From contig JAAOMT010000088.1 of the NCBI GenBank assembly GCA_016748015.1, positions 217,663 through 281,662 of the forward strand: a stretch of DNA of 64,000 bases. Direction: 5' to 3'. Numbering within the stretch: the stretch's first letter is position 1; every line of letters starts with the position of its first letter. Below the pieces are notes generated by a model. That model was not told where the DNA came from and made no database searches. It saw nothing but the letters and a program-made list of their open reading frames with translations. Source of the stretch: Geosiphon pyriformis uo1. Its lineage: Eukaryota; Fungi; Glomeromycota. Below, in pieces: positions 8,501-62,163 of the stretch. The translations under genes and the position numbers were made by a program.

Positions 8501-9846
8501 AAACTGATAGCTTTGCAGTTATTAATTTTAAATATGTTAATTTTATTCAAATTACTGAGCACAAAATTAATAATATTGTAACTGTTTTATAAAATTAATC
8601 TTGAAATTTTTGAATTTTAAAAAACTATGCATTTAGTTAAATTAAAAAAAGAAAAAGCTTTTAGAAAAGAAACATATTTTAGTAACAAATATAAATTAAG
8701 AAAAATAAAAGAATTATAATCTTTTATTTTAAGATGTTTAGATTAAAAAATGAATTAGATATAAAAATAATAAATAAATTAAAATTTTTTTTATAATTTT
8801 AAAAGTTTTATTTATATATTCTTAAATAATAAAGTTAACAACTAAATTAACAATTAAGTTAATAATAATTCAATAATTAACTTTAAAAATAGTAATTAAT
8901 AAATAATTTAAAATAATAAAAAGTAAGTACTAATAGAAAAAATTGAGCTGTAATAATATTAATTTAATAATAAAATTGTATTTGTAATTTTGTATATATT
9001 TTTACAATATATAATGGAAATAAAACAAGTAATAATTATTAACCAAAAAAGTATTTTTTTAAAAAAAGATATAATAATAATATAGTTAATTAAAAAGATA
9101 ATATAAATAAAAAACAATGAATTAAAATATTAATAATATTAAAAATTAAGGAAATAAAAAAGCAATTAAAAACTACGAATAACAATATTTTTATTTTTTT
9201 TTACATCAATTCTTAAGTAACAAAAACATTTTAGATTATTTTGTATCTAAATACAAGGTTATTTTTCAAATACTCCAATAATAATTAAAATTTTTTTAAT
9301 AAATATTATACTTAATTATTAAAAGTTTTTGCATAGTGCCAAAAACAAAATAGTGTTGCTAATTAATTTAAATAAAAGCCGTATATATTTTTATGAAATT
9401 AATAAAATAATTAATATTTAAATAAATATCTGTTTTTTATTAAAAATTAAATATTGAACTTGAAAAAAAAACGAAGATTTTTTTATTTGTCTTTTTTATT
9501 AGTTATATAAGTAAAATTTTCAAAGTTGTAAAAAAATATTCTAAAAAACAGAGATTAATTAAATTTTCTTTTTTGAATTTTATTTATTAAAATTAACTTG
9601 AAAAGTAAGCAAATTGCTGTTGTAATGTTTTAAATAAATAACTATTAAAAATAATTGCAATCTGTTTTTGAATTTTTAAAGTGCCAAATGAAACATAAAA
9701 TTATGCTAGCATATTATCTTTTTACTCTCAAATATTCTTGAAAAGATTAAAGCTGCAATTTTGAAATTTTTTACACATTCAATTTGCTATTTGTTAACAT
9801 TTTACTTTAATTTGTAACAATATTGTTGATTTTGACTTGCCTGTAA
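4600..9846. repeat. Extremely AT-rich, CpG-depleted degenerate repeat (TE relic) block
   Basis: No real ORFs and very few CG. About 5970-7160 aligns by eye with ~56920-58230 and in part with ~46100-46270; ~9630-9720 aligns with ~62590-62670. Boundaries approximate. Confidence 0.75.
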
Positions 9847-11810
9847 NNNNNNNNNNNNNNNNNNNNNNNNNNNNNNNNNNNNNNNNNNNNNNNNNNNNNN
9901 NNNNNNNNNNNNNNNNNNNNNNNNNNNNNNNNNNNNNNNNNNNNNNNNNNNNNNNNNNNNNNNNNNNNNNNNNNNNNNNNNNNNNNNNNNNNNNNNNNNN
10001 NNNNNNNNNNNNNNNNNNNNNNNNNNNNNNNNNNNNNNNNNNNNNNNNNNNNNNNNNNNNNNNNNNNNNNNNNNNNNNNNNNNNNNNNNNNNNNNNNNNN
10101 NNNNNNNNNNNNNNNNNNNNNNNNNNNNNNNNNNNNNNNNNNNNNNNNNNNNNNNNNNNNNNNNNNNNNNNNNNNNNNNNNNNNNNNNNNNNNNNNNNNN
10201 NNNNNNNNNNNNNNNNNNNNNNNNNNNNNNNNNNNNNNNNNNNNNNNNNNNNNNNNNNNNNNNNNNNNNNNNNNNNNNNNNNNNNNNNNNNNNNNNNNNN
10301 NNNNNNNNNNNNNNNNNNNNNNNNNNNNNNNNNNNNNNNNNNNNNNNNNNNNNNNNNNNNNNNNNNNNNNNNNNNNNNNNNNNNNNNNNNNNNNNNNNNN
10401 NNNNNNNNNNNNNNNNNNNNNNNNNNNNNNNNNNNNNNNNNNNNNNNNNNNNNNNNNNNNNNNNNNNNNNNNNNNNNNNNNNNNNNNNNNNNNNNNNNNN
10501 NNNNNNNNNNNNNNNNNNNNNNNNNNNNNNNNNNNNNNNNNNNNNNNNNNNNNNNNNNNNNNNNNNNNNNNNNNNNNNNNNNNNNNNNNNNNNNNNNNNN
10601 NNNNNNNNNNNNNNNNNNNNNNNAGAGTTTAATGGTTTCTAAAATTAAAATTGATCCGCATTCCCATTTTCACAAAAGGAGATTTTGATTGAAAGCCTCG
10701 ATCATTGTTGTGGCAAACCTACATGAACAATTTTAGATTTTGAAGAATTAGTCTATCATAATTTCCTTTCTTAATATTTGCATCATTAATTTGGCTCTTC
10801 TTTTAAGGTTTAGCCTAAATTTGGTTAGTATAGTTGCTTGACTGTTGGCACATATATAGAAATTATCATTATAAGGCTAAAGACCAAATTTATAAATATA
10901 ACTTTAGGTAAATCGAGGATTATATTATATTAAAGTTAAAATATTTCCTTAAAATAGACCTTTGCAAATTCATAGTTGCCTCTCTGAATGAAATTTGGTT
11001 ATTTTTTTCATAGAAATGCATGCAAGATTTATTTGGTATATTTGCTCAAGGAAAAATGCCGCATGTAAATTACGCCAGAGAATAAGATATTTGATATTAT
11101 AAGATGCAAATCGATTTGTTGGTTACCTGCGGATTTTTTAAATTTAACGTAACTTATATCCTGCAAATTTGTATATGGGTTAACAGTGATTATGAAAATC
11201 TATCTGTTAAATTAATTATTTTTGGATAAAACTTTCAATATGATTAACCTTTCGTCAAAGAAAGTGCCTTTCAAAGTTTAAAAAACACTAGAAATTATGG
11301 TGAATAAAATAGACTTTTAAATAAACATCATAAGCGATCATATAAATACCACAAAATACGATCACATATGTTGTTTTTCCCTAGGAAATTTAACTTGCTC
11401 GCAAAAGACGGTTTCTTTTAAAAATTTAGCCCTAACTACTTCAAGTACAGTCCTGGCGGATATTAATGGAGAACAATTCTTTTGGATTACACAATTTTTT
11501 AAAATACAAACCCAGAAAAACTTGTCATTCAAGATATCTTAATCCCAATGCTATGATATATATAAAAACTAATATTTAGTATGGCCTCCTTCTGGATTTA
11601 TACAAGCTTGAATATCGGCAAGAATGTTATCAATATTAGTAAGTACCACTTCTCTGGAAGATTTGCCCATTCTTTTTTACTCCCAATAAAAATCTCTAGA
11701 GACCGTTTTTTTTTCAACCATTTCTTTTACTTTTTTATCCAAAATTCCTCAATGATAGCTATATGATGGCCATGGCAGAACACGACATCGAGGTCTTGCT
11801 TGGAGGTGGG
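9362..11810 (+). repeat. Direct segmental duplication, copy 1 (contains N-gap 9847-10623)
   Basis: Both flanks of the gap match 59471-59954 and 61094-62163 almost base for base. Copy 2 lacks ~95 bp present here at ~11130-11224. Confidence 0.93.
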
Positions 11811-24781: not shown

Positions 24782-25139
24782 TCACACTGATGTGTTTTCT
24801 TTTCCATCGGATCGATCCTTTTTTTCACAATAAGCATAAGGGCATAGAAAACAGGTCTGGGACACAATTTTGCATTCTTCATCGGGGTTACATTTAGGTC
24901 GGCATCGAGGAATCATTGAAGTGCAAAAAACGCAGCCTTCTTCTTCTTCTTCTACAAATAGTAAAGAAATGATAAATCTGGCGAAAAGTTGCTTAAAACT
25001 AGAAATATCAGAGTCGAATAAATTTTGCTTGGCAAAAACTTATTTTACCTTGGTCATAATAAAGCAATGAATTACTTTTTAAGAGGAGAAAACTTTTGAA
25101 AATGTATAGAAAAAGGAGATAAAGTTTTGCAAAAAACAT
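24782..25139 (-). CDS. Small secreted 8-Cys protein, 86 aa, Opy2-like cysteine-rich domain (2 exons; not in ORF track)
   Basis: Exon 1 25139-25049, a 97-nt GTAAAA...TTTGTAG intron, then exon 2 24951-24782. Product: MFFAKLYLLFLYIFKSFLLLKSNSLLYYDQEEEEEGCVFCTSMIPRCRPKCNPDEECKIVSQTCFLCPYAYCEKKDRSDGKENTSV*. It has a hydrophobic N-terminus, an acidic spacer and C-x2-C-x6-C-x3-C-x5-C-x6-C-x2-C-x4-C. Confidence 0.85.
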
Positions 25140-52777: not shown

Positions 52778-54354
52778 CTACTTTTGCCAGGTTTTATCAT
52801 TGGGAATAAAGCTTTCAGTAGGAGTTAGGCTTGAAGGAACCTTTGGTAAAAAGTTATTCTGACTACAATCTGTAATCATAACACCAAAGTAAGGTCCATA
52901 ATGATCCTTCGGATTTTTTGTTTTTTCTTTATCAATGCAATTCTAATAAATTTTCAATTAGGAAACGGGTTAATATTTTATAAATATATGATCAGCTTTA
53001 AAAAATAAGAAATTTCAAATTTAACCTTGTTCTCCACAAAATCCGTTGAAAGTGGGTTCGAAGCTCTTGCACAAATTATAATTTGATGGTTTACACCACT
53101 ATCCCAAAACTCAGTGCCACCATGAACATAATTCTCGCCTTTATATTCAACTGGTTCCCGTGGGATATTATCTCGCTGATTAGTGAATCTAACAGATGGT
53201 ATGAGACTGTTAACATGTTTTGCGTAGGCCTCGTTGCCGATACGTGGTTTCCCAAAAGAAAAGGTTTCGACTACTATTGAACGCTTGATATTTTTGACGA
53301 GATAAAGAGCAGCAAATTCAGCATAAACTAAAGATTAATTAGATTTTGAAAGTTATATTTTAAAAATAAAACCTCCAATAATTCTAAATTTTGAAGAGGG
53401 AAAACAAATCATATATATTACCACCAGCGAGGCCATATCCAATAAAGTAAATGGATTTCCAATTTGGGTTTGATTCAACACCGTTAATTAGATCTTTGCC
53501 TTCATGCGATTCCCATTCTAAATATCTCGCCTTGAAACCATTATGGATTTTAGCACCAGGTACGCCAGGAAAATCCACCATTTGAGAGTTTTCTTTTCGA
53601 AGCTCTTGAGTCAATTCATTTTCCATCTTGCCAAATGCATATATAGCTATATTTTTGTTAATCGTAAAGACTCCTGCAGCAACAAGAGATGGGTTAACAT
53701 TGAAAAATAATAACAATTATGTTTGAAGTCAAAAATTAAATTAAGCTTGGAAATTGATTCGACAAATTTACCAGAAGTTTCTTCAGTTGGTTTTATTTGT
53801 TTTTGAACTAAACAATATGCGGCTGTGGCTAATTTAGCAAATTTGTAAAAAGTTTCGAATAAAAGTCTGTCGACTTCATTGTCTGATTTTGGAGGGTTGG
53901 CTGCGATTATTTGCTCATTGGAAAATATAGTTTCTAAATTAGAGCCATTAATTTCTTCTAAGGGTAAAAAAATTGGAATGGTTGAGAGGTTTGATTGAGA
54001 AATATTCGCATCTGTTTCAGGTTTTGAAGGTTCATAGAATGGATTCAGGCTAGTGTCAAATTCTTTTTTGCTAGCTGCTGTGATAAGGTTTGAGGCTCTA
54101 AAATCTTGAGCTTGTTCTTCTATACTCTCAAAATCGGATACCGATTCATCATATATCTGGTTTTCAAAAGCATCCTCGTCATATATGTTTTTTGATGGGA
54201 TCAATGTATCGATTTCTTCAGTGAAATTTGGTAATACAGGACTGATTGGATTCAGTTCGTATGTTATCGGCGAAGCGTTTAATAAGAAATACAAAGAGCT
54301 TGAATTCCAAAAGAGAATGAACACAAATATAGCTCTAGATAAAGATTTTTTCAT
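52778..54354 (-). CDS. Secreted class-3 lipase-like alpha/beta hydrolase lacking the nucleophile Ser (probable pseudoenzyme), 4 exons
   Basis: Exons 54354-53772, 53673-53422, 53327-53026 and 52942-52778. Signal peptide, acidic pro-region, AKLATAAYC, AKIHNGF, IYFIGYGLAGVYA (where GHSLGG is expected), TFSFGKPRIGNEAYA, RFTNQRDNIP, YVHGGTEFW, DHYGPYFG. Confidence 0.88.
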
Positions 54355-58900: not shown

Positions 58901-59950
58901 TTGTAATTAATTTGAGTTGATTATTAATTAAAAGTTTTATGTCTTTTTAAATTAATATTTAAAATGTTTAAAAGTGTATTTGGCTTTTATTCCTGTGTTT
59001 AGGCTTATAAATAATTACAAAATCAAAGTCTAAAAATAATAAAACTAATAAGCTTATTTTTTTATTAATGCTTTAACAAAATGAGATCCTTCCACTAACT
59101 ATAGCACAAAACACATGTGTTCTACAATAGGCGCGAATTATGAGCTTTCTGCACGTGACCAGCCACTAAGCTTATTTTTATTAAAAGCTTAAGTGACAAA
59201 AAATATTTTAAGTTCTTTTAATTACAAAATATAATTATTTTAGATTGTTTGTATTTAAATAAAATGCTATTTTTTAAATACTGTAAACAATTATTAATAA
59301 ACTATTGAATATAATATTATTAACATTTAATTTAAAGCATTGAAAATTAAAAATAATAGATATTAATTTTTGATAATTTTATTGAATTTATGAAATTTAC
59401 ATATATTTTTAATAATTTGTTTTTTAATAAATAGTATAATGCATTCAATTTTGTTTCAAAAAGTATATATATTAATTTAAATAAAAGCTGTATATATTTT
59501 TATCAGGTTAATAAAATAATAATATTTAAATAAATATCTGTTTTTTATTAAAAATTAAATATTGAACTTGAAAAAAAAACGAAGATTTTTTTATTTGTCT
59601 TTTTTATTAGTTATATAAGTAAAATTTTCAAAGTTGTAAAAAAATATTCTAAAAAACAGAGATTAATTAAATTTTCTTTTTTGAATTTTATTTATTAAAA
59701 TTAACTTGAAAAGTAAGCAAATTGCTGTTGTAATGTTTTAAATAAATAACTATTAAAAATAATTGCAATCTGTTTTTGAATTTTTAAAGTGCCAAATGAA
59801 ACATAAAATTATGCTAGCATATTATCTTTTTACTCTCAAATATTCTTGAAAAGATTAAAGCTGCAATTTTGAAATTTTTTACACATTCAATTTGCTATTT
59901 GTTAACATTTTACTTTAATTTGTAACAATATTGTTGATTTTGACTTGCCT
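55950..59950. repeat. Extremely AT-rich degenerate repeat block
   Basis: Homologous to parts of the 5970-7160 and 46100-46590 blocks. CG almost absent except in a short island at ~59083-59167. Confidence 0.8.
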
Positions 59951-62163
59951 GTAAGATTCATGAGTTACGGGTCCATAAAAAGATTTTGCAAATTTTAGGG
60001 CAGAACGAGTGCTATCTGTAAAGTCAATTTGCAAATGAGAAGATTCTAGAATTCTTTATTATCCTATTCTGATGAATACCACTTGAGGAAGTGTGGAACG
60101 GGAAGTGATAGCTGTTCCCATTTTCATAAAACGCATGGTAGCTACGGTTTCAAAATTAAATTAAAAACAAAACCATTTTTTGAGAGTTAAATTCAAATCC
60201 CTCATATTTATTATGACAATTTTTATTTTCATTGAAATTCCACTAATGATATATATATTTAGTACACATTTGAATAAAAGATCAAAAAAATAAATAAACT
60301 TGCTAAAAGTTTTTCTTTAATCTAAAATATAAATTAGCTGATATTGAATTTCAATTGCCAAAGCCAATGACCCACCAAGGATTCCACCACCAAGGGACAC
60401 AATAAGCTTGAGCACAACTCCAGCAAGTTTTCGGTTTGACCACACATTTCTTATTTATCTTCTGACAATGCAAATTTTGCCACCAACTACAGTATGGTGA
60501 TACCCAAGGGCACCAAGCACATTGCGGCCAATAGCTGCCGCTCGCTTGTATATTTTTATTTGAATTTCCATTCACGCTTCCATCTGCTTGACCATTTGCT
60601 TGACCATTATTTTCTGGTAATGGAGTCTCATCCAATGGTACCGGATCATTGGCAGTGTTTGGAGGGTCTTGGGCCGTGACCATGGTCACGGTGTTGACAG
60701 CGATTAAAGCCAAAAGGAAAATAGCCACAAAAAATAGATTCAAAGTTTTTTTGTTCATTTTTGGAAGATTCTTTGAAGCTAACAGTTTAAATTATTTTTA
60801 CTTTGGTTCTGTTTTCAAGAATGATTTGAAATTTGATGGATTGAGGGGGTCTTATATAGCGAATTTAGAAATATAAAAGATAAAATTTTTACGTTGTGAC
60901 CATTAAAATCAACTAACTAAAAGATAGGCTACATCTGGCGTAAATTTCATTGTCGTTAAATTTTGTAAACTATGAAAATTAACAAATTTAGAATAGGTTA
61001 TCGGGTTTTTAAGTATACCTCACCTTCCTAGTAGGAGTAAAAAGATAAATTTAGTTTAAAATTTCTGGTAAAATTTTTAGAATTTTCGCAATGAGAGTTT
61101 AATGGTTTCTAAAATTAAAATTGATCCGCATTCCCATTTTCACAAAAGGAGATTTTGATTGAAAGCCTCGATCATTGTTGTGGCAAACCTACATGAACAA
61201 TTTTAGATTTTGAAGAATTAGTCTATCATAATTTCCTTTCTTAATATTTGCATCATTAATTTGGCTCTTCTTTTAAGGTTTAGCCTAAATTTGGTTAGTA
61301 TAGTTGCTTGACTGTTGGCACATATATAGAAATTATCATTATAAGGCTAAAGACCAAATTTATAAATATAACTTTAGGTAAATCGAGGATTATATTATAT
61401 TAAAGTTAAAATATTTCCTTAAAATAGACCTTTGCAAATTCATAGTTGCCTCTCTGAATGAAATTTGGTTATTTTTTTCATAGAAATGCATGCAAGATTT
61501 ATTTGGTATATTTGCTCAAGGAAAAATGCCGCATGTAAATTATGCCAGAGAATAAGATATTTGATATTATAAGATGCAAATCGATTTGTTGGTTACCTGG
61601 ATAAAACTTTCAATATGATTAACCTTTCGTCAAAGAAAGTGCCTTTCAAAGTCTAAAAAACACTAGAAATTATGGTGAATAAAATAGACTTTTAAATAAA
61701 AATCATAAGCGATCATATAAATACCACAAAATACGATCACATATGTTGTTTTTCCCTAGGAAATTTAACTTGCCCGCAAAAGACGGTTTCTTTTAAAAAT
61801 TTAGCCCTAACTACTTCAGATACAGTCCTGGCGGATAGTAATGGAGAACAATTCTTTTGGATTACACAATTTTTTAAAATACAAACCCAGAAAAACTTGT
61901 CATTCAAGATATCTTAATCCCAATGCTATGATATATATAAAAACTAATATTTAGTATGGCCCCCTTCTGGATTTATACAAGCTTGAATATCGGCAAGAAT
62001 GTTATAAATATTAGTAAGGACCACTTCTCTGGAGGATTTGCCCATTCTTTTTTACTCCCAATAAAAACCTCTAAATTCCGTTTTTTTTTCAACCATTTCT
62101 TTTACTTTTTTATCCATGATGGCCATAGCAGAACACGACATAGAGGTCTTGCTTGGAGGTGGG
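59471..62163 (+). repeat. Direct segmental duplication, copy 2 (complete)
   Basis: Matches 9362-11810. 59955-61093 (1139 bp) corresponds to the 777-N gap of copy 1. Confidence 0.93.
60351..60758 (-). CDS. Small secreted Trp/Cys-rich protein, 135 aa, Opy2-like 8-Cys domain
   Basis: Signal peptide MNKKTLNLFFVAIFLLALIAVNTVTMVTA, an acidic N/D/P/G-rich spacer, then CAWCPWVSPYCSWWQNLHCQKINKKCVVKPKTCWSCAQAYC and a PWWWNPWW tail. 8 Cys and 11 Trp. TATATAAG lies ~95 bp upstream. Confidence 0.9.
   Translation of the reverse strand: MNKKTLNLFFVAIFLLALIAVNTVTMVTAQDPPNTANDPVPLDETPLPENNGQANGQADGSVNGNSNKNIQASGSYWPQCAWCPWVSPYCSWWQNLHCQKINKKCVVKPKTCWSCAQAYCVPWWWNPWWVIGFGN

What the first reader, a model, noticed from the sequence alone, without database searches (positions are those of the whole stretch)
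60351..60758. Trp-saturated secreted peptide shares the same 8-Cys scaffold: a locally diversified miniprotein family
Seen: CAWCPWVSPYC...C...CVVKPKTCWSCAQAYC aligns with CVFCTSMIPRC...C...CKIVSQTCFLCPYAYC of the 24.8-kb gene. They share CxxC-x4-P-x-C and C-x5-TCxxC-xxAYC; only the two central loops differ in length. Both have a signal peptide, acidic spacer and Cys domain, yet differ in intron structure and surface chemistry. This one has 11 Trp and 5 Lys and no acidic residue in its last ~60 aa, ending PWWWNPWWVIGFGN. Inference: a cationic Trp-rich mature domain balanced by an acidic pro-piece is the layout of membrane-active antimicrobial or toxin precursors and of glycan- or surface-binding proteins. 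The scaffold may be a reusable effector fold in this lineage. This is my best candidate for an undescribed system in the window.
Basis: partly seen in the sequence, partly recalled or inferred. Interest (0 to 1): 0.82.

Follow-up and report, generated by a model that had tools for sequence, protein, structure and literature searches.

The report
Trp-rich secreted Opy2-domain peptide, Geosiphon
This is an apparently intact gene of the cyanobacterium-hosting fungus Geosiphon pyriformis for a small secreted peptide whose eight-cysteine core is a diverged copy of a known yeast sensor domain (Opy2), rebuilt into a tryptophan-rich, positively charged variant seen only in this fungus; what it binds is untested.

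Summary
Window 60351-60758 (minus) is an intact, intronless 135-aa ORF with a signal peptide, an acidic Asn/Gly/Pro-rich spacer, a 41-aa eight-Cys domain and a Trp-rich tail (11 Trp, 5 Lys, no Asp/Glu in the last 61 aa). Its cysteines align one for one with the two-exon gene at 24782-25139.

The scaffold is not undescribed. It is the Opy2 cysteine-rich domain (Pfam PF09463).
- The 24.8-kb gene passes Pfam's cut-off (28.5 bits); the focal gene falls just under it (18.6 bits, E 0.0025).
- The focal clade matches the genome's own Opy2 domains profile to profile (90.9%, E 1e-6).
- Shuffles that keep the cysteines fixed never reach its score (0 of 1000).
- An Opy2 cluster is the nearest shape in the ESM Atlas.

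The genome is Geosiphon pyriformis. The gene belongs to a single clade of at least 7 intact Trp-rich paralogues, plus copies cut by assembly gaps and dead copies. Every member has a cationic domain and an anionic spacer. A profile search of 1.84 billion protein representatives found no convincing match outside this species.

This scan had already reported the wider secreted Opy2-domain family elsewhere in this genome; the Trp-rich clade is the new part. Expression, processing and activity are untested: no RNA run was listed and there is no dibasic cleavage site. It is a new variant of a known domain, of moderate interest.

The parts
60351..60758 (-). Intronless coding sequence of the Trp-rich secreted peptide (135 aa; stop codon at 60351-60353)
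   Evidence: The frame is intact in 7 paralogues and all 8 Cys are invariant. dN/dS is below 1 in most pairs over the signal peptide and the Cys domain.
60672..60758 (-). Signal peptide, residues 1-29: basic start, 17-residue hydrophobic core, V-T-A before the predicted cut
   Evidence: Sequence. Kyte-Doolittle peak of 3.2. Nearly identical in all paralogues, with dN/dS 0-0.5. No signal-peptide predictor was available.
60522..60671 (-). Acidic spacer rich in Asn, Gly, Gln and Pro (net charge -5), probably disordered; it changes fastest among paralogues
   Evidence: composition, charge, no dibasic site, no N-glycosylation sequon. (dN/dS 0.3-2.9 from small counts).
60399..60521 (-). 41-aa eight-Cys domain: a diverged Opy2-type cysteine-rich domain with enlarged Cys3-Cys4 and Cys4-Cys5 loops and the clade-invariant motif C-S-W-W-Q
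   Evidence: Pfam PF09463 matched over all 35 positions, 18.6 bits, E 0.0025. hhalign 90.9%, E 1.1e-6. Shuffle control. Nearest ESM Atlas shape is an Opy2 cluster.
60354..60398 (-). 15-residue Trp-rich C-terminal tail. There is no hydrophobic stretch, so no membrane anchor or GPI signal
   Evidence: Only V-x-W-W after Cys8 is shared by the whole clade. The long tail is shared only with the C597 paralogue.
60759..61167 (-). 5' flank (promoter region) copied together with the gene in the other Trp-clade loci
   Evidence: window 60668-61167 is 73-75% identical in DNA to the stretches upstream of the copies on C568, C549, C643, C614, C527 and C437.
24782..25139 (-). Two-exon gene for an 86-aa secreted single-domain Opy2 peptide (exon 1 25049-25139, intron 24952-25048, exon 2 24782-24951; Opy2 domain 24827-24934)
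   Evidence: sequence, GT..AG, phase 1. Pfam PF09463 28.5 bits, above the cut-off of 22.1. AF2 model pLDDT 85.
9362..11810 (-). Near-identical duplicate of the focal gene's flanks around a run of 777 N (9847-10623), exactly where a further copy of the gene would lie
   Evidence: 9362-9846 is 99% identical to 59471-59954; 10624-11129 is 100% identical to 61094-61599; 11223-11810 is 94% identical to 61598-62163.

Best explanation
SHOWN. The ORF is an intact, constrained gene of Geosiphon pyriformis. It encodes a precursor with a signal peptide, a 46-aa acidic disordered spacer, and a 41-aa eight-cysteine domain followed by a 15-aa Trp-rich tail. The domain is a diverged copy of the Opy2 cysteine-rich (CR) domain. 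It has lost the membrane anchor and cytoplasmic tail of Opy2. It has gained a 7-residue Trp-rich insert between Cys3 and Cys4, which is modelled as a short helix packed on the domain's beta-hairpin. The gene is one of at least 7 intact paralogues that form a single clade found only in Geosiphon, inside a wider expansion of anchorless secreted Opy2-domain genes.

INFERRED. After secretion, four disulfides hold a compact core that displays Trp, Lys and Arg and carries no acidic residue. I take this surface to bind an anionic, lipid- or glycan-rich envelope outside the hypha. The most likely target is a bacterial envelope: Nostoc in the bladder, endobacteria or soil competitors. This would work in the manner of Trp-rich cationic antimicrobial peptides. 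The anionic spacer would mask the charge until the peptide is released or engaged.

My confidence in the identity part is about 0.85. My confidence in the envelope-binding, antimicrobial-like mechanism is about 0.35. The figure given in the confidence field is for the whole statement.
For: Gene and layout:
- Searches show the ORF and the layout.
- All 7 paralogues keep the same signal peptide and all 8 Cys.
- Spacers are anionic (-4 to -9). Domains are cationic (+5 to +8) with at most 1 acidic residue. Trp is 14-18% against 1.1% in the window's open frames.

Selection: dN/dS is 0-0.5 in the signal peptide and 0.3-0.7 in the Cys domain for most pairs.

Opy2 origin:
- Pfam PF09463 is matched over its full 35 positions, and by 6 of 7 members.
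- hhalign against 14 Opy2 domains of the same genome gives 90.9%, E 1.1e-6, with all Cys in register.
- The shuffle control gives 0 of 1000.
- The two AF2 models share the hairpin around Cys5 and Cys8.
- The first ESM Atlas shape hit is an Opy2 N-terminal domain cluster, TM 0.53 over 49 residues.
- Trp-clade genes lie 2-5 kb from ordinary Opy2-domain genes on C549.

No anchor: the protein ends 15 residues after Cys8. The canonical Opy2 on C669 has a transmembrane helix and a long tail.

Lineage restriction: a profile search of 1.84 billion representatives gave only Geosiphon proteins plus one spurious repeat protein.

Single clade: support 83/96.

Mechanism by analogy: Trp plus Lys/Arg is the hallmark of interface-binding antimicrobial peptides (review PMC6017362). 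Cationic cysteine-rich peptides control intracellular bacteria in legume nodules (PMC12886489). The Opy2 CR domain is an extracellular binding module, binding the HMH domain of Hkr1/Msb2 (PMC13233613).
Against: - The Pfam score of the focal domain is below the curated cut-off (18.6 against 22.1 bits).
- The Trp model is only moderately confident (pLDDT 71). Model coordinates, and therefore disulfide pairing, could not be compared.
- No spacer has a dibasic (Kex2-type) site. If the spacer stays attached, the secreted protein is about neutral, which weakens the antimicrobial reading.
- Expression is untested: no RNA run was listed.
- The deposited gene model starts at Met26 and lacks the signal peptide.
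- dN/dS counts are small.
- There is no functional evidence of any kind.
Confidence: 0.4

Rival explanations
1. Glycan or cell-wall binder. The Trp clusters form aromatic platforms, as in carbohydrate-binding modules. The peptide would coat or cross-link a polysaccharide such as fungal chitin or glucan, the symbiosome wall layer or the Nostoc sheath, without harming cells.
For: Trp is 14-18% and conserved Trp pairs sit next to cysteines. The parent Opy2 CR domain binds a heavily glycosylated mucin domain (PMC13233613). The spacer resembles a flexible linker and has no cleavage site.
Against: No carbohydrate-binding family was hit in Pfam. The complete lack of acidic residues and a net charge of +5 to +8 are not typical of neutral-glycan binders. 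No binding data exist.
Confidence: 0.25
2. Soluble decoy or ligand of a signalling mucin. The domain would keep the ancestral Opy2 CR function of binding the HMH domain of Msb2/Hkr1-type mucins. As a free peptide it would tune MAP-kinase signalling in the fungus itself or in other fungi.
For: Homology to the Opy2 CR domain. CR-HMH binding is established in yeast (PMC13233613, citing Yamamoto et al. 2016).
Against: The Trp clade sits on a long stem branch and has two remodelled loops and a wholly changed surface charge. This reading fits the ordinary secreted Opy2 paralogues, such as the 24.8-kb gene, better than it fits this one. A Geosiphon Msb2/Hkr1 was not sought.
Confidence: 0.12
3. An unexpressed or decaying ORF. 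The copies would be carried along by segmental duplication in repeat-rich DNA, with no present function.
For: Repeats flank the gene on both sides. Dead copies exist at C643:411930 and C578:245707. No RNA run was listed. The annotated models are poor.
Against: Seven copies keep open frames and all 8 Cys. The signal peptide shows dN/dS 0-0.5 at dS up to about 1. Trp at 14-18% in a genome of 25% G+C, where TGG is rare, needs selection.
Confidence: 0.1

Closest known systems
Opy2 cysteine-rich (CR) domain, Pfam PF09463 (membrane anchor of the yeast HOG/SHO1 branch)
   Same: Eight cysteines in the same order, with the shared motifs CxxC-x4-P-x-C and C-x5/6-C-xx-C-x4-C. The domain is extracellular. 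The C-terminal hairpin around Cys5 and Cys8 is predicted in both. Homology is supported at profile level and the nearest predicted shape is an Opy2 cluster.
   Different: No transmembrane helix and no cytoplasmic Ste50-binding tail. It has its own signal peptide and an acidic spacer. The Cys3-Cys4 loop has 7 residues instead of 2-4 and is modelled as a helix. The surface is Trp-rich, cationic and free of acidic residues. The Pfam score is below the cut-off.
Other secreted, anchorless Opy2-domain peptides of Geosiphon (the window's 24.8-kb gene; clusters on C549, C597, C643; earlier scan reports s1-554904 and s1-505737)
   Same: Same genome, same domain and the same signal-peptide-plus-domain design. 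They are clustered and duplicated, and some lie 2-5 kb from Trp-clade genes.
   Different: Those genes have short loops, mixed or acidic charge, 1-4 domains and often an intron after the signal-peptide exon. The Trp clade is intronless, always has a single domain, and has its own conserved signal peptide and 5' flank.
[quoted passage not shown]
   Same: A secreted precursor, a cationic Trp- or Cys-rich mature part and, for NCRs, large lineage-specific families in a host of intracellular bacteria (PMC6017362, PMC12886489). This is analogy only.
   Different: No sequence or family relationship. The cysteine framework differs. No processing site is seen here and no activity is shown.
Cysteine-stabilised alpha-beta (CS-alpha-beta) defensins and scorpion toxins
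   Same: The Trp model has a helix followed by a two-stranded hairpin. There are weak shape hits to tamapin (Foldseek E 5.3, 29 columns) and a scorpion defensin (Z 2.1, rmsd 2.6 over 30 residues).
   Different: The scores are at noise level. The defining CxxxC (helix) and CxC (strand) pairs are absent.

Membership tests
Opy2 CR domain (PF09463) | Eight cysteines in the order and spacing of the family model, aligned over the whole model | tested here: met
   model positions 1-35 of 35 are matched and all 8 Cys are in register. Two loops are longer than in the family.
Opy2 CR domain (PF09463) | Score at or above Pfam's gathering cut-off (22.1 bits) | tested here: not met
   18.6 bits, E 0.0025 for the focal protein; 6 of 7 clade members match, none better than E 0.0025. 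The 24.8-kb gene meets the cut-off (28.5 bits).
Opy2 CR domain (PF09463) | Homology to bona fide members beyond cysteine spacing | tested here: met
   hhalign 90.9%, E 1.1e-6. HMM of 14 Geosiphon Opy2 domains gives 27.2 bits against Cys-fixed shuffles of 2.9 +/- 4.6, 0 of 1000.
Opy2 CR domain (PF09463) | Same fold and disulfide map | tested here: inconclusive
   The same terminal hairpin appears in both AF2 models. The first ESM Atlas hit is an Opy2 cluster, TM 0.53. No solved structure exists to compare. Model coordinates are not returned, so disulfide pairs could not be read.
Opy2 protein (HOG-pathway membrane anchor) | Single transmembrane helix and cytoplasmic Ste50-binding tail after the CR domain | tested here: not met
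   The protein ends 15 residues after Cys8. The genome's true Opy2 orthologue, with helix and tail, is on C669.
Opy2 protein (HOG-pathway membrane anchor) | Binding of the CR domain to the HMH domain of Msb2/Hkr1 | not testable with these tools
   Known for yeast only (PMC13233613).
CS-alpha-beta defensins | CxxxC in the helix, paired with CxC in the last strand | tested here: not met
   The sequence has neither motif. Shape hits are only Z 2.1 and E 5.3.
Hydrophobins and hevein/CBM18 (other fungal 8-Cys domains) | Adjacent CC pairs in the cysteine pattern; a Pfam match | tested here: not met
   There is no CC pair, and Pfam gives no hit other than Opy2 even at E up to 10.
Propeptide-processed antimicrobial peptide precursors | Recognisable cleavage site (dibasic, Kex2-type) between the anionic pro-piece and the cationic peptide | tested here: not met
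   no K/R pair in the spacer of any of the 7 members. Other proteases cannot be excluded.

The most novel reading that the evidence does not exclude
Geosiphon, the only fungus known to house cyanobacteria inside its cells, has turned a sensor domain into a private family of cationic Trp-rich peptides. It would deliver them into the symbiosome to control growth, permeability or differentiation of Nostoc (or of its Mollicutes-related endobacteria). That would be a fungal counterpart of legume NCR peptides, built on a different fold.
Probability: 0.1. Interest if true: 0.8.

Novelty: new variant of a known kind. Interest (0 to 1): 0.4.

Why it matters
No solved structure was found for the Opy2 CR domain, and it is characterised only as part of a yeast membrane osmosensing complex. 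This gene shows the domain freed from the membrane, multiplied, and in one clade rebuilt into a Trp-rich cationic miniprotein found in a single symbiotic lineage.

If the peptides act on bacteria or on the symbiotic interface, they would give a testable molecular handle on how Geosiphon manages its intracellular Nostoc. They would also add a new disulfide scaffold to the known host peptides that control symbionts.

There is a practical point too. The deposited gene models lack the signal peptide or are shifted in frame, so a secretome survey that relies on these models would probably miss the clade.

Tried and rejected
- RNA evidence: the look-up of sequencing runs listed no RNA run for window 59300-61800, so read laying could not be used. 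None was listed, which is not the same as none exists.
- Solved structures: a sequence profile of the Opy2 domains against PDB chains gave only chance FYVE hits, E 4.5-4.9. Foldseek against PDB gave nothing at E <= 0.001. VIA-align against 48,161 chains gave a best Z of 2.1-2.2 for both models.
- ESM Atlas by features: no usable hit for the focal domain. For the three-domain paralogue P0006 the hits were weak (scores 0.76-0.80): two nematode Cys-rich clusters and one cluster with no recorded taxa.
- Word search with P0006 found only P0006 itself.
- The 611-aa hit P0005 in the deep search is an unrelated tandem-repeat protein. It was picked up through six weak repeats and rejected on inspection.
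- Literature: no paper in the library links Opy2 or PF09463 with secretomes or effectors. The Geosiphon genome paper (Malar et al. 2021) and Yamamoto et al. 2016 are not held.
- The tree does not resolve which ordinary Opy2 paralogue is nearest to the Trp clade.
- The spliced model of the 24.8-kb gene was searched only exon by exon, by reference. The joined protein was never built or submitted.
Full report
WHAT IS THERE

Window 60351-60758 on the minus strand is an uninterrupted ATG-to-stop ORF of 135 codons. It reads as follows:
- a 29-residue signal peptide with a basic start, a 17-residue hydrophobic core and V-T-A before the likely cut;
- a 46-residue spacer that is 65% Asn/Gly/Gln/Ser/Thr/Pro, with net charge -5;
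- a 60-residue C-terminal part with net charge +5, 11 Trp (18%) and no Asp or Glu.

That C-terminal part holds eight cysteines within 41 residues (window 60399-60521). It is followed by a 15-residue Trp-rich tail.

A loose eight-Cys pattern run over all six frames of the window finds only this place and 24827-24934.

The second place belongs to a two-exon gene. Exon 1 (25049-25139) encodes a hydrophobic N-terminus. A 97-nt GT..AG intron in phase 1 follows. Exon 2 (24782-24951) encodes five Glu, the eight-Cys domain and a short charged tail (the splice is my reading of the sequence). I searched this gene exon by exon, by reference. The joined protein was never built or submitted.

WHAT THE SCAFFOLD IS

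Both proteins hit one Pfam family and no other, even at E up to 10. That family is PF09463, the Opy2 eight-cysteine domain, matched over all 35 model positions. The 24.8-kb gene passes the curated cut-off (28.5 against 22.1 bits). The focal gene does not (18.6 bits, E 0.0025).

Cysteine-rich domains can match by spacing alone, so I tested the link in four further ways.
1. A profile of the seven Trp-rich paralogues matches a profile of 14 ordinary Opy2 domains from the same genome, with all cysteines in register (probability 90.9%, E 1.1e-6).
2. An HMM of those 14 domains scores the focal domain at 27.2 bits. A thousand shuffles that keep every cysteine in place give 2.9 +/- 4.6 bits (maximum 19), and none reaches the real score. 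The 24.8-kb gene is one of the 14 domains, which favours the match a little.
3. The AlphaFold models share a two-stranded hairpin centred on Cys5 and Cys8. The Trp clade model has pLDDT 71 and the ordinary domain pLDDT 85. The Trp model adds a short helix in the enlarged Cys3-Cys4 loop.
4. A shape search of the ESM Atlas with the Trp model puts a cluster named 'Membrane anchor Opy2 N-terminal domain' first (78% of members carry PF09463; TM 0.53 over 49 residues).

I found no solved structure of this domain. A sequence profile, Foldseek and VIA-align against the PDB all gave nothing above noise. The tools do not return model coordinates, so I could not compare disulfide pairing.

WHOSE GENE IT IS, AND THE FAMILY

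The nearest database proteins are hypothetical proteins of Geosiphon pyriformis. The window is C643:217663-281662 of a 128-Mb assembly with 25% G+C.

The genome has at least 19 six-frame hits to PF09463 above the cut-off.
- One, on C669, is the true Opy2 orthologue, with a transmembrane helix and a long Ser/Thr/Pro-rich tail.
- The others that I read lie in short open frames with one to four domains and no anchor. They are clustered on C549, C597 and C643.
- One of these is annotated as the 163-aa protein P0006, which has a signal peptide and three domains.

The focal gene belongs to a distinct subgroup. It has seven intact, intronless genes:
- C643:278016 (the focal gene);
- C597:261783;
- C549:429100;
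- C549:431873;
- C643:427118;
- C527:34410;
- C614:84962.

These seven share an almost identical signal peptide, an invariant C-S-W-W-Q motif, all eight cysteines and V-x-W-W after Cys8.

Further copies are cut by runs of N (C568:39797, C437:12986). One is diverged, with CxC and CC in place of the CxxC pairs (C364). Two are dead (C643:411930, C578:245707).

The seven form one group on a tree of 21 domains (support 83/96; present in 82% of bootstrap trees). Deeper branches are unresolved.

About 500 bp upstream of the start codon is copied with the gene in the other Trp-clade loci, at 73-75% identity. On C549 the Trp genes lie 2-5 kb from ordinary Opy2-domain genes. This fits an origin by local duplication followed by remodelling.

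A profile search of 1.84 billion representative proteins found only three Geosiphon proteins and one unrelated repeat protein. On present data the clade is therefore confined to this species. A 59-position profile has limited reach, and other Archaeosporales genomes could not be searched.

IS IT A WORKING GENE?

Pairwise Nei-Gojobori estimates by region:
- signal peptide: dN/dS 0-0.5;
- Cys domain and tail: 0.3-0.7 for most pairs, about 1.1 for two recent pairs;
- spacer: 0.3-2.9.

The counts are small, so these are indications only. Together with seven open frames, invariant cysteines, and Trp at 14-18% in a genome where TGG is rare (1.1% Trp in the window's long open frames), they argue for selection on the protein.

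Expression could not be tested. No RNA run was listed, so no reads were laid.

The deposited models are poor. The focal gene's model (P0001, 110 aa) starts at Met26 and lacks the signal peptide. The C597 paralogue's model (P0003) leaves the conserved frame after residue 56, although the genomic frame is intact. A secretome survey that relies on these models would probably miss the clade.

HOW IT MOST LIKELY WORKS

Shown:
- a secretory N-terminus;
- no anchor;
- an Opy2-type disulfide domain;
- a clade-wide split of charge, with spacers at -4 to -9 and domains at +5 to +8 carrying at most one acidic residue;
- conserved Trp.

Established elsewhere: the Opy2 CR domain is an extracellular binding module that grips the glycosylated HMH domain of the mucins Hkr1 and Msb2 (PMC13233613, citing Yamamoto et al. 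2016). Trp with Lys/Arg is the signature of peptides that sit in the interface of anionic membranes (PMC6017362).

Inferred: the domain is a compact disulfide-locked core showing a Trp/Lys surface. It binds an anionic envelope, most likely bacterial. The acidic spacer offsets the charge in the precursor. I put this at about 0.35.

Against this reading, no spacer has a dibasic processing site. If the spacer stays attached, the whole secreted protein is about neutral.

The rivals are:
- a harmless glycan or wall binder (0.25);
- a soluble decoy for Msb2-type mucins (0.12), which suits the ordinary paralogues better than this remodelled one;
- an unexpressed ORF (0.10).

COMPARISON AND NOVELTY

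At domain level this is a diverged member of a known family. One membership criterion, the Pfam cut-off, is not met, and three independent lines support homology.

At protein level it is not an Opy2: it has no transmembrane helix and no Ste50-binding tail.

It is not a CS-alpha-beta defensin, a hydrophobin or a hevein domain, because their defining cysteine motifs are absent. The weak tamapin and scorpion-defensin shape hits are at noise level.

The likeness to Trp-rich antimicrobial peptides and to NCR peptides is one of design, not descent.

This scan has already reported the secreted Opy2-domain family on other DNA of this genome (s1-554904, s1-505737, both followed up). It also holds two first-reader notes: one on the 24.8-kb gene (s1-491484) and one on the C643:427118 paralogue of the Trp clade (s1-528920). 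I found no paper that links Opy2 domains with secreted peptides.

The Trp-rich clade is therefore a new variant of a known kind. It is of moderate interest until expression and activity are known.

Noticed in passing
window 9362-11810: The flanks of the focal gene are duplicated 50 kb upstream at 94-100% identity, around a run of 777 N (9847-10623) that sits exactly where another copy of the gene would lie. This is either a very recent duplicate hidden in an assembly gap or an assembly artefact.
   Followed up: partly
L010 (G000:C568:39797 onward) and L014 (G000:C437:12986-13168): Two further Trp-clade copies are interrupted by runs of N just after the signal peptide or spacer. Assembly gaps coincide with this family three times, so the copy number is probably underestimated.
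   Followed up: partly
P0001 (focal gene) and P0003 (G000:C597:261783-262175): The deposited gene models look wrong. P0001 starts at Met26 and lacks the signal peptide. P0003 switches into another frame after residue 56 although the genomic frame is open and 88% identical to the focal protein.
   Followed up: yes
L015/L016 (G000:C364:4328-4609 and 336-617, opposite strands): A diverged relative with a similar signal peptide has CxC and CC in place of the two CxxC pairs. It is present twice, in inverted orientation, on a short contig.
   Followed up: no
G000:C597:180-262 kb against C643:175-278 kb; C549:429-436 kb against C643:412-427 kb: The order of ordinary Opy2-domain genes and Trp-clade genes looks parallel on different contigs. 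Flanking DNA is about 82% identical where measured. This suggests old segmental duplications rather than alleles.
   Followed up: partly
L020 (G000:C669:1236256-1236357, minus): This is the genome's canonical Opy2 orthologue: a CR domain, then a transmembrane helix, then a long Ser/Thr/Pro-rich tail, all in one 485-codon open frame.
   Followed up: partly
window 53384-54354, minus: Two overlapping open frames (235 and 110 aa) carry a hydrophobic N-terminus and motifs that, from memory, resemble a class-3 lipase. They are probably exons of one secreted enzyme gene.
   Followed up: no
window 59471-59954 and 61820-62163: Both flanks of the focal gene match many contigs at 70-82% identity. They are dispersed repeats, so the gene lies in repeat-rich DNA.
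   Followed up: no
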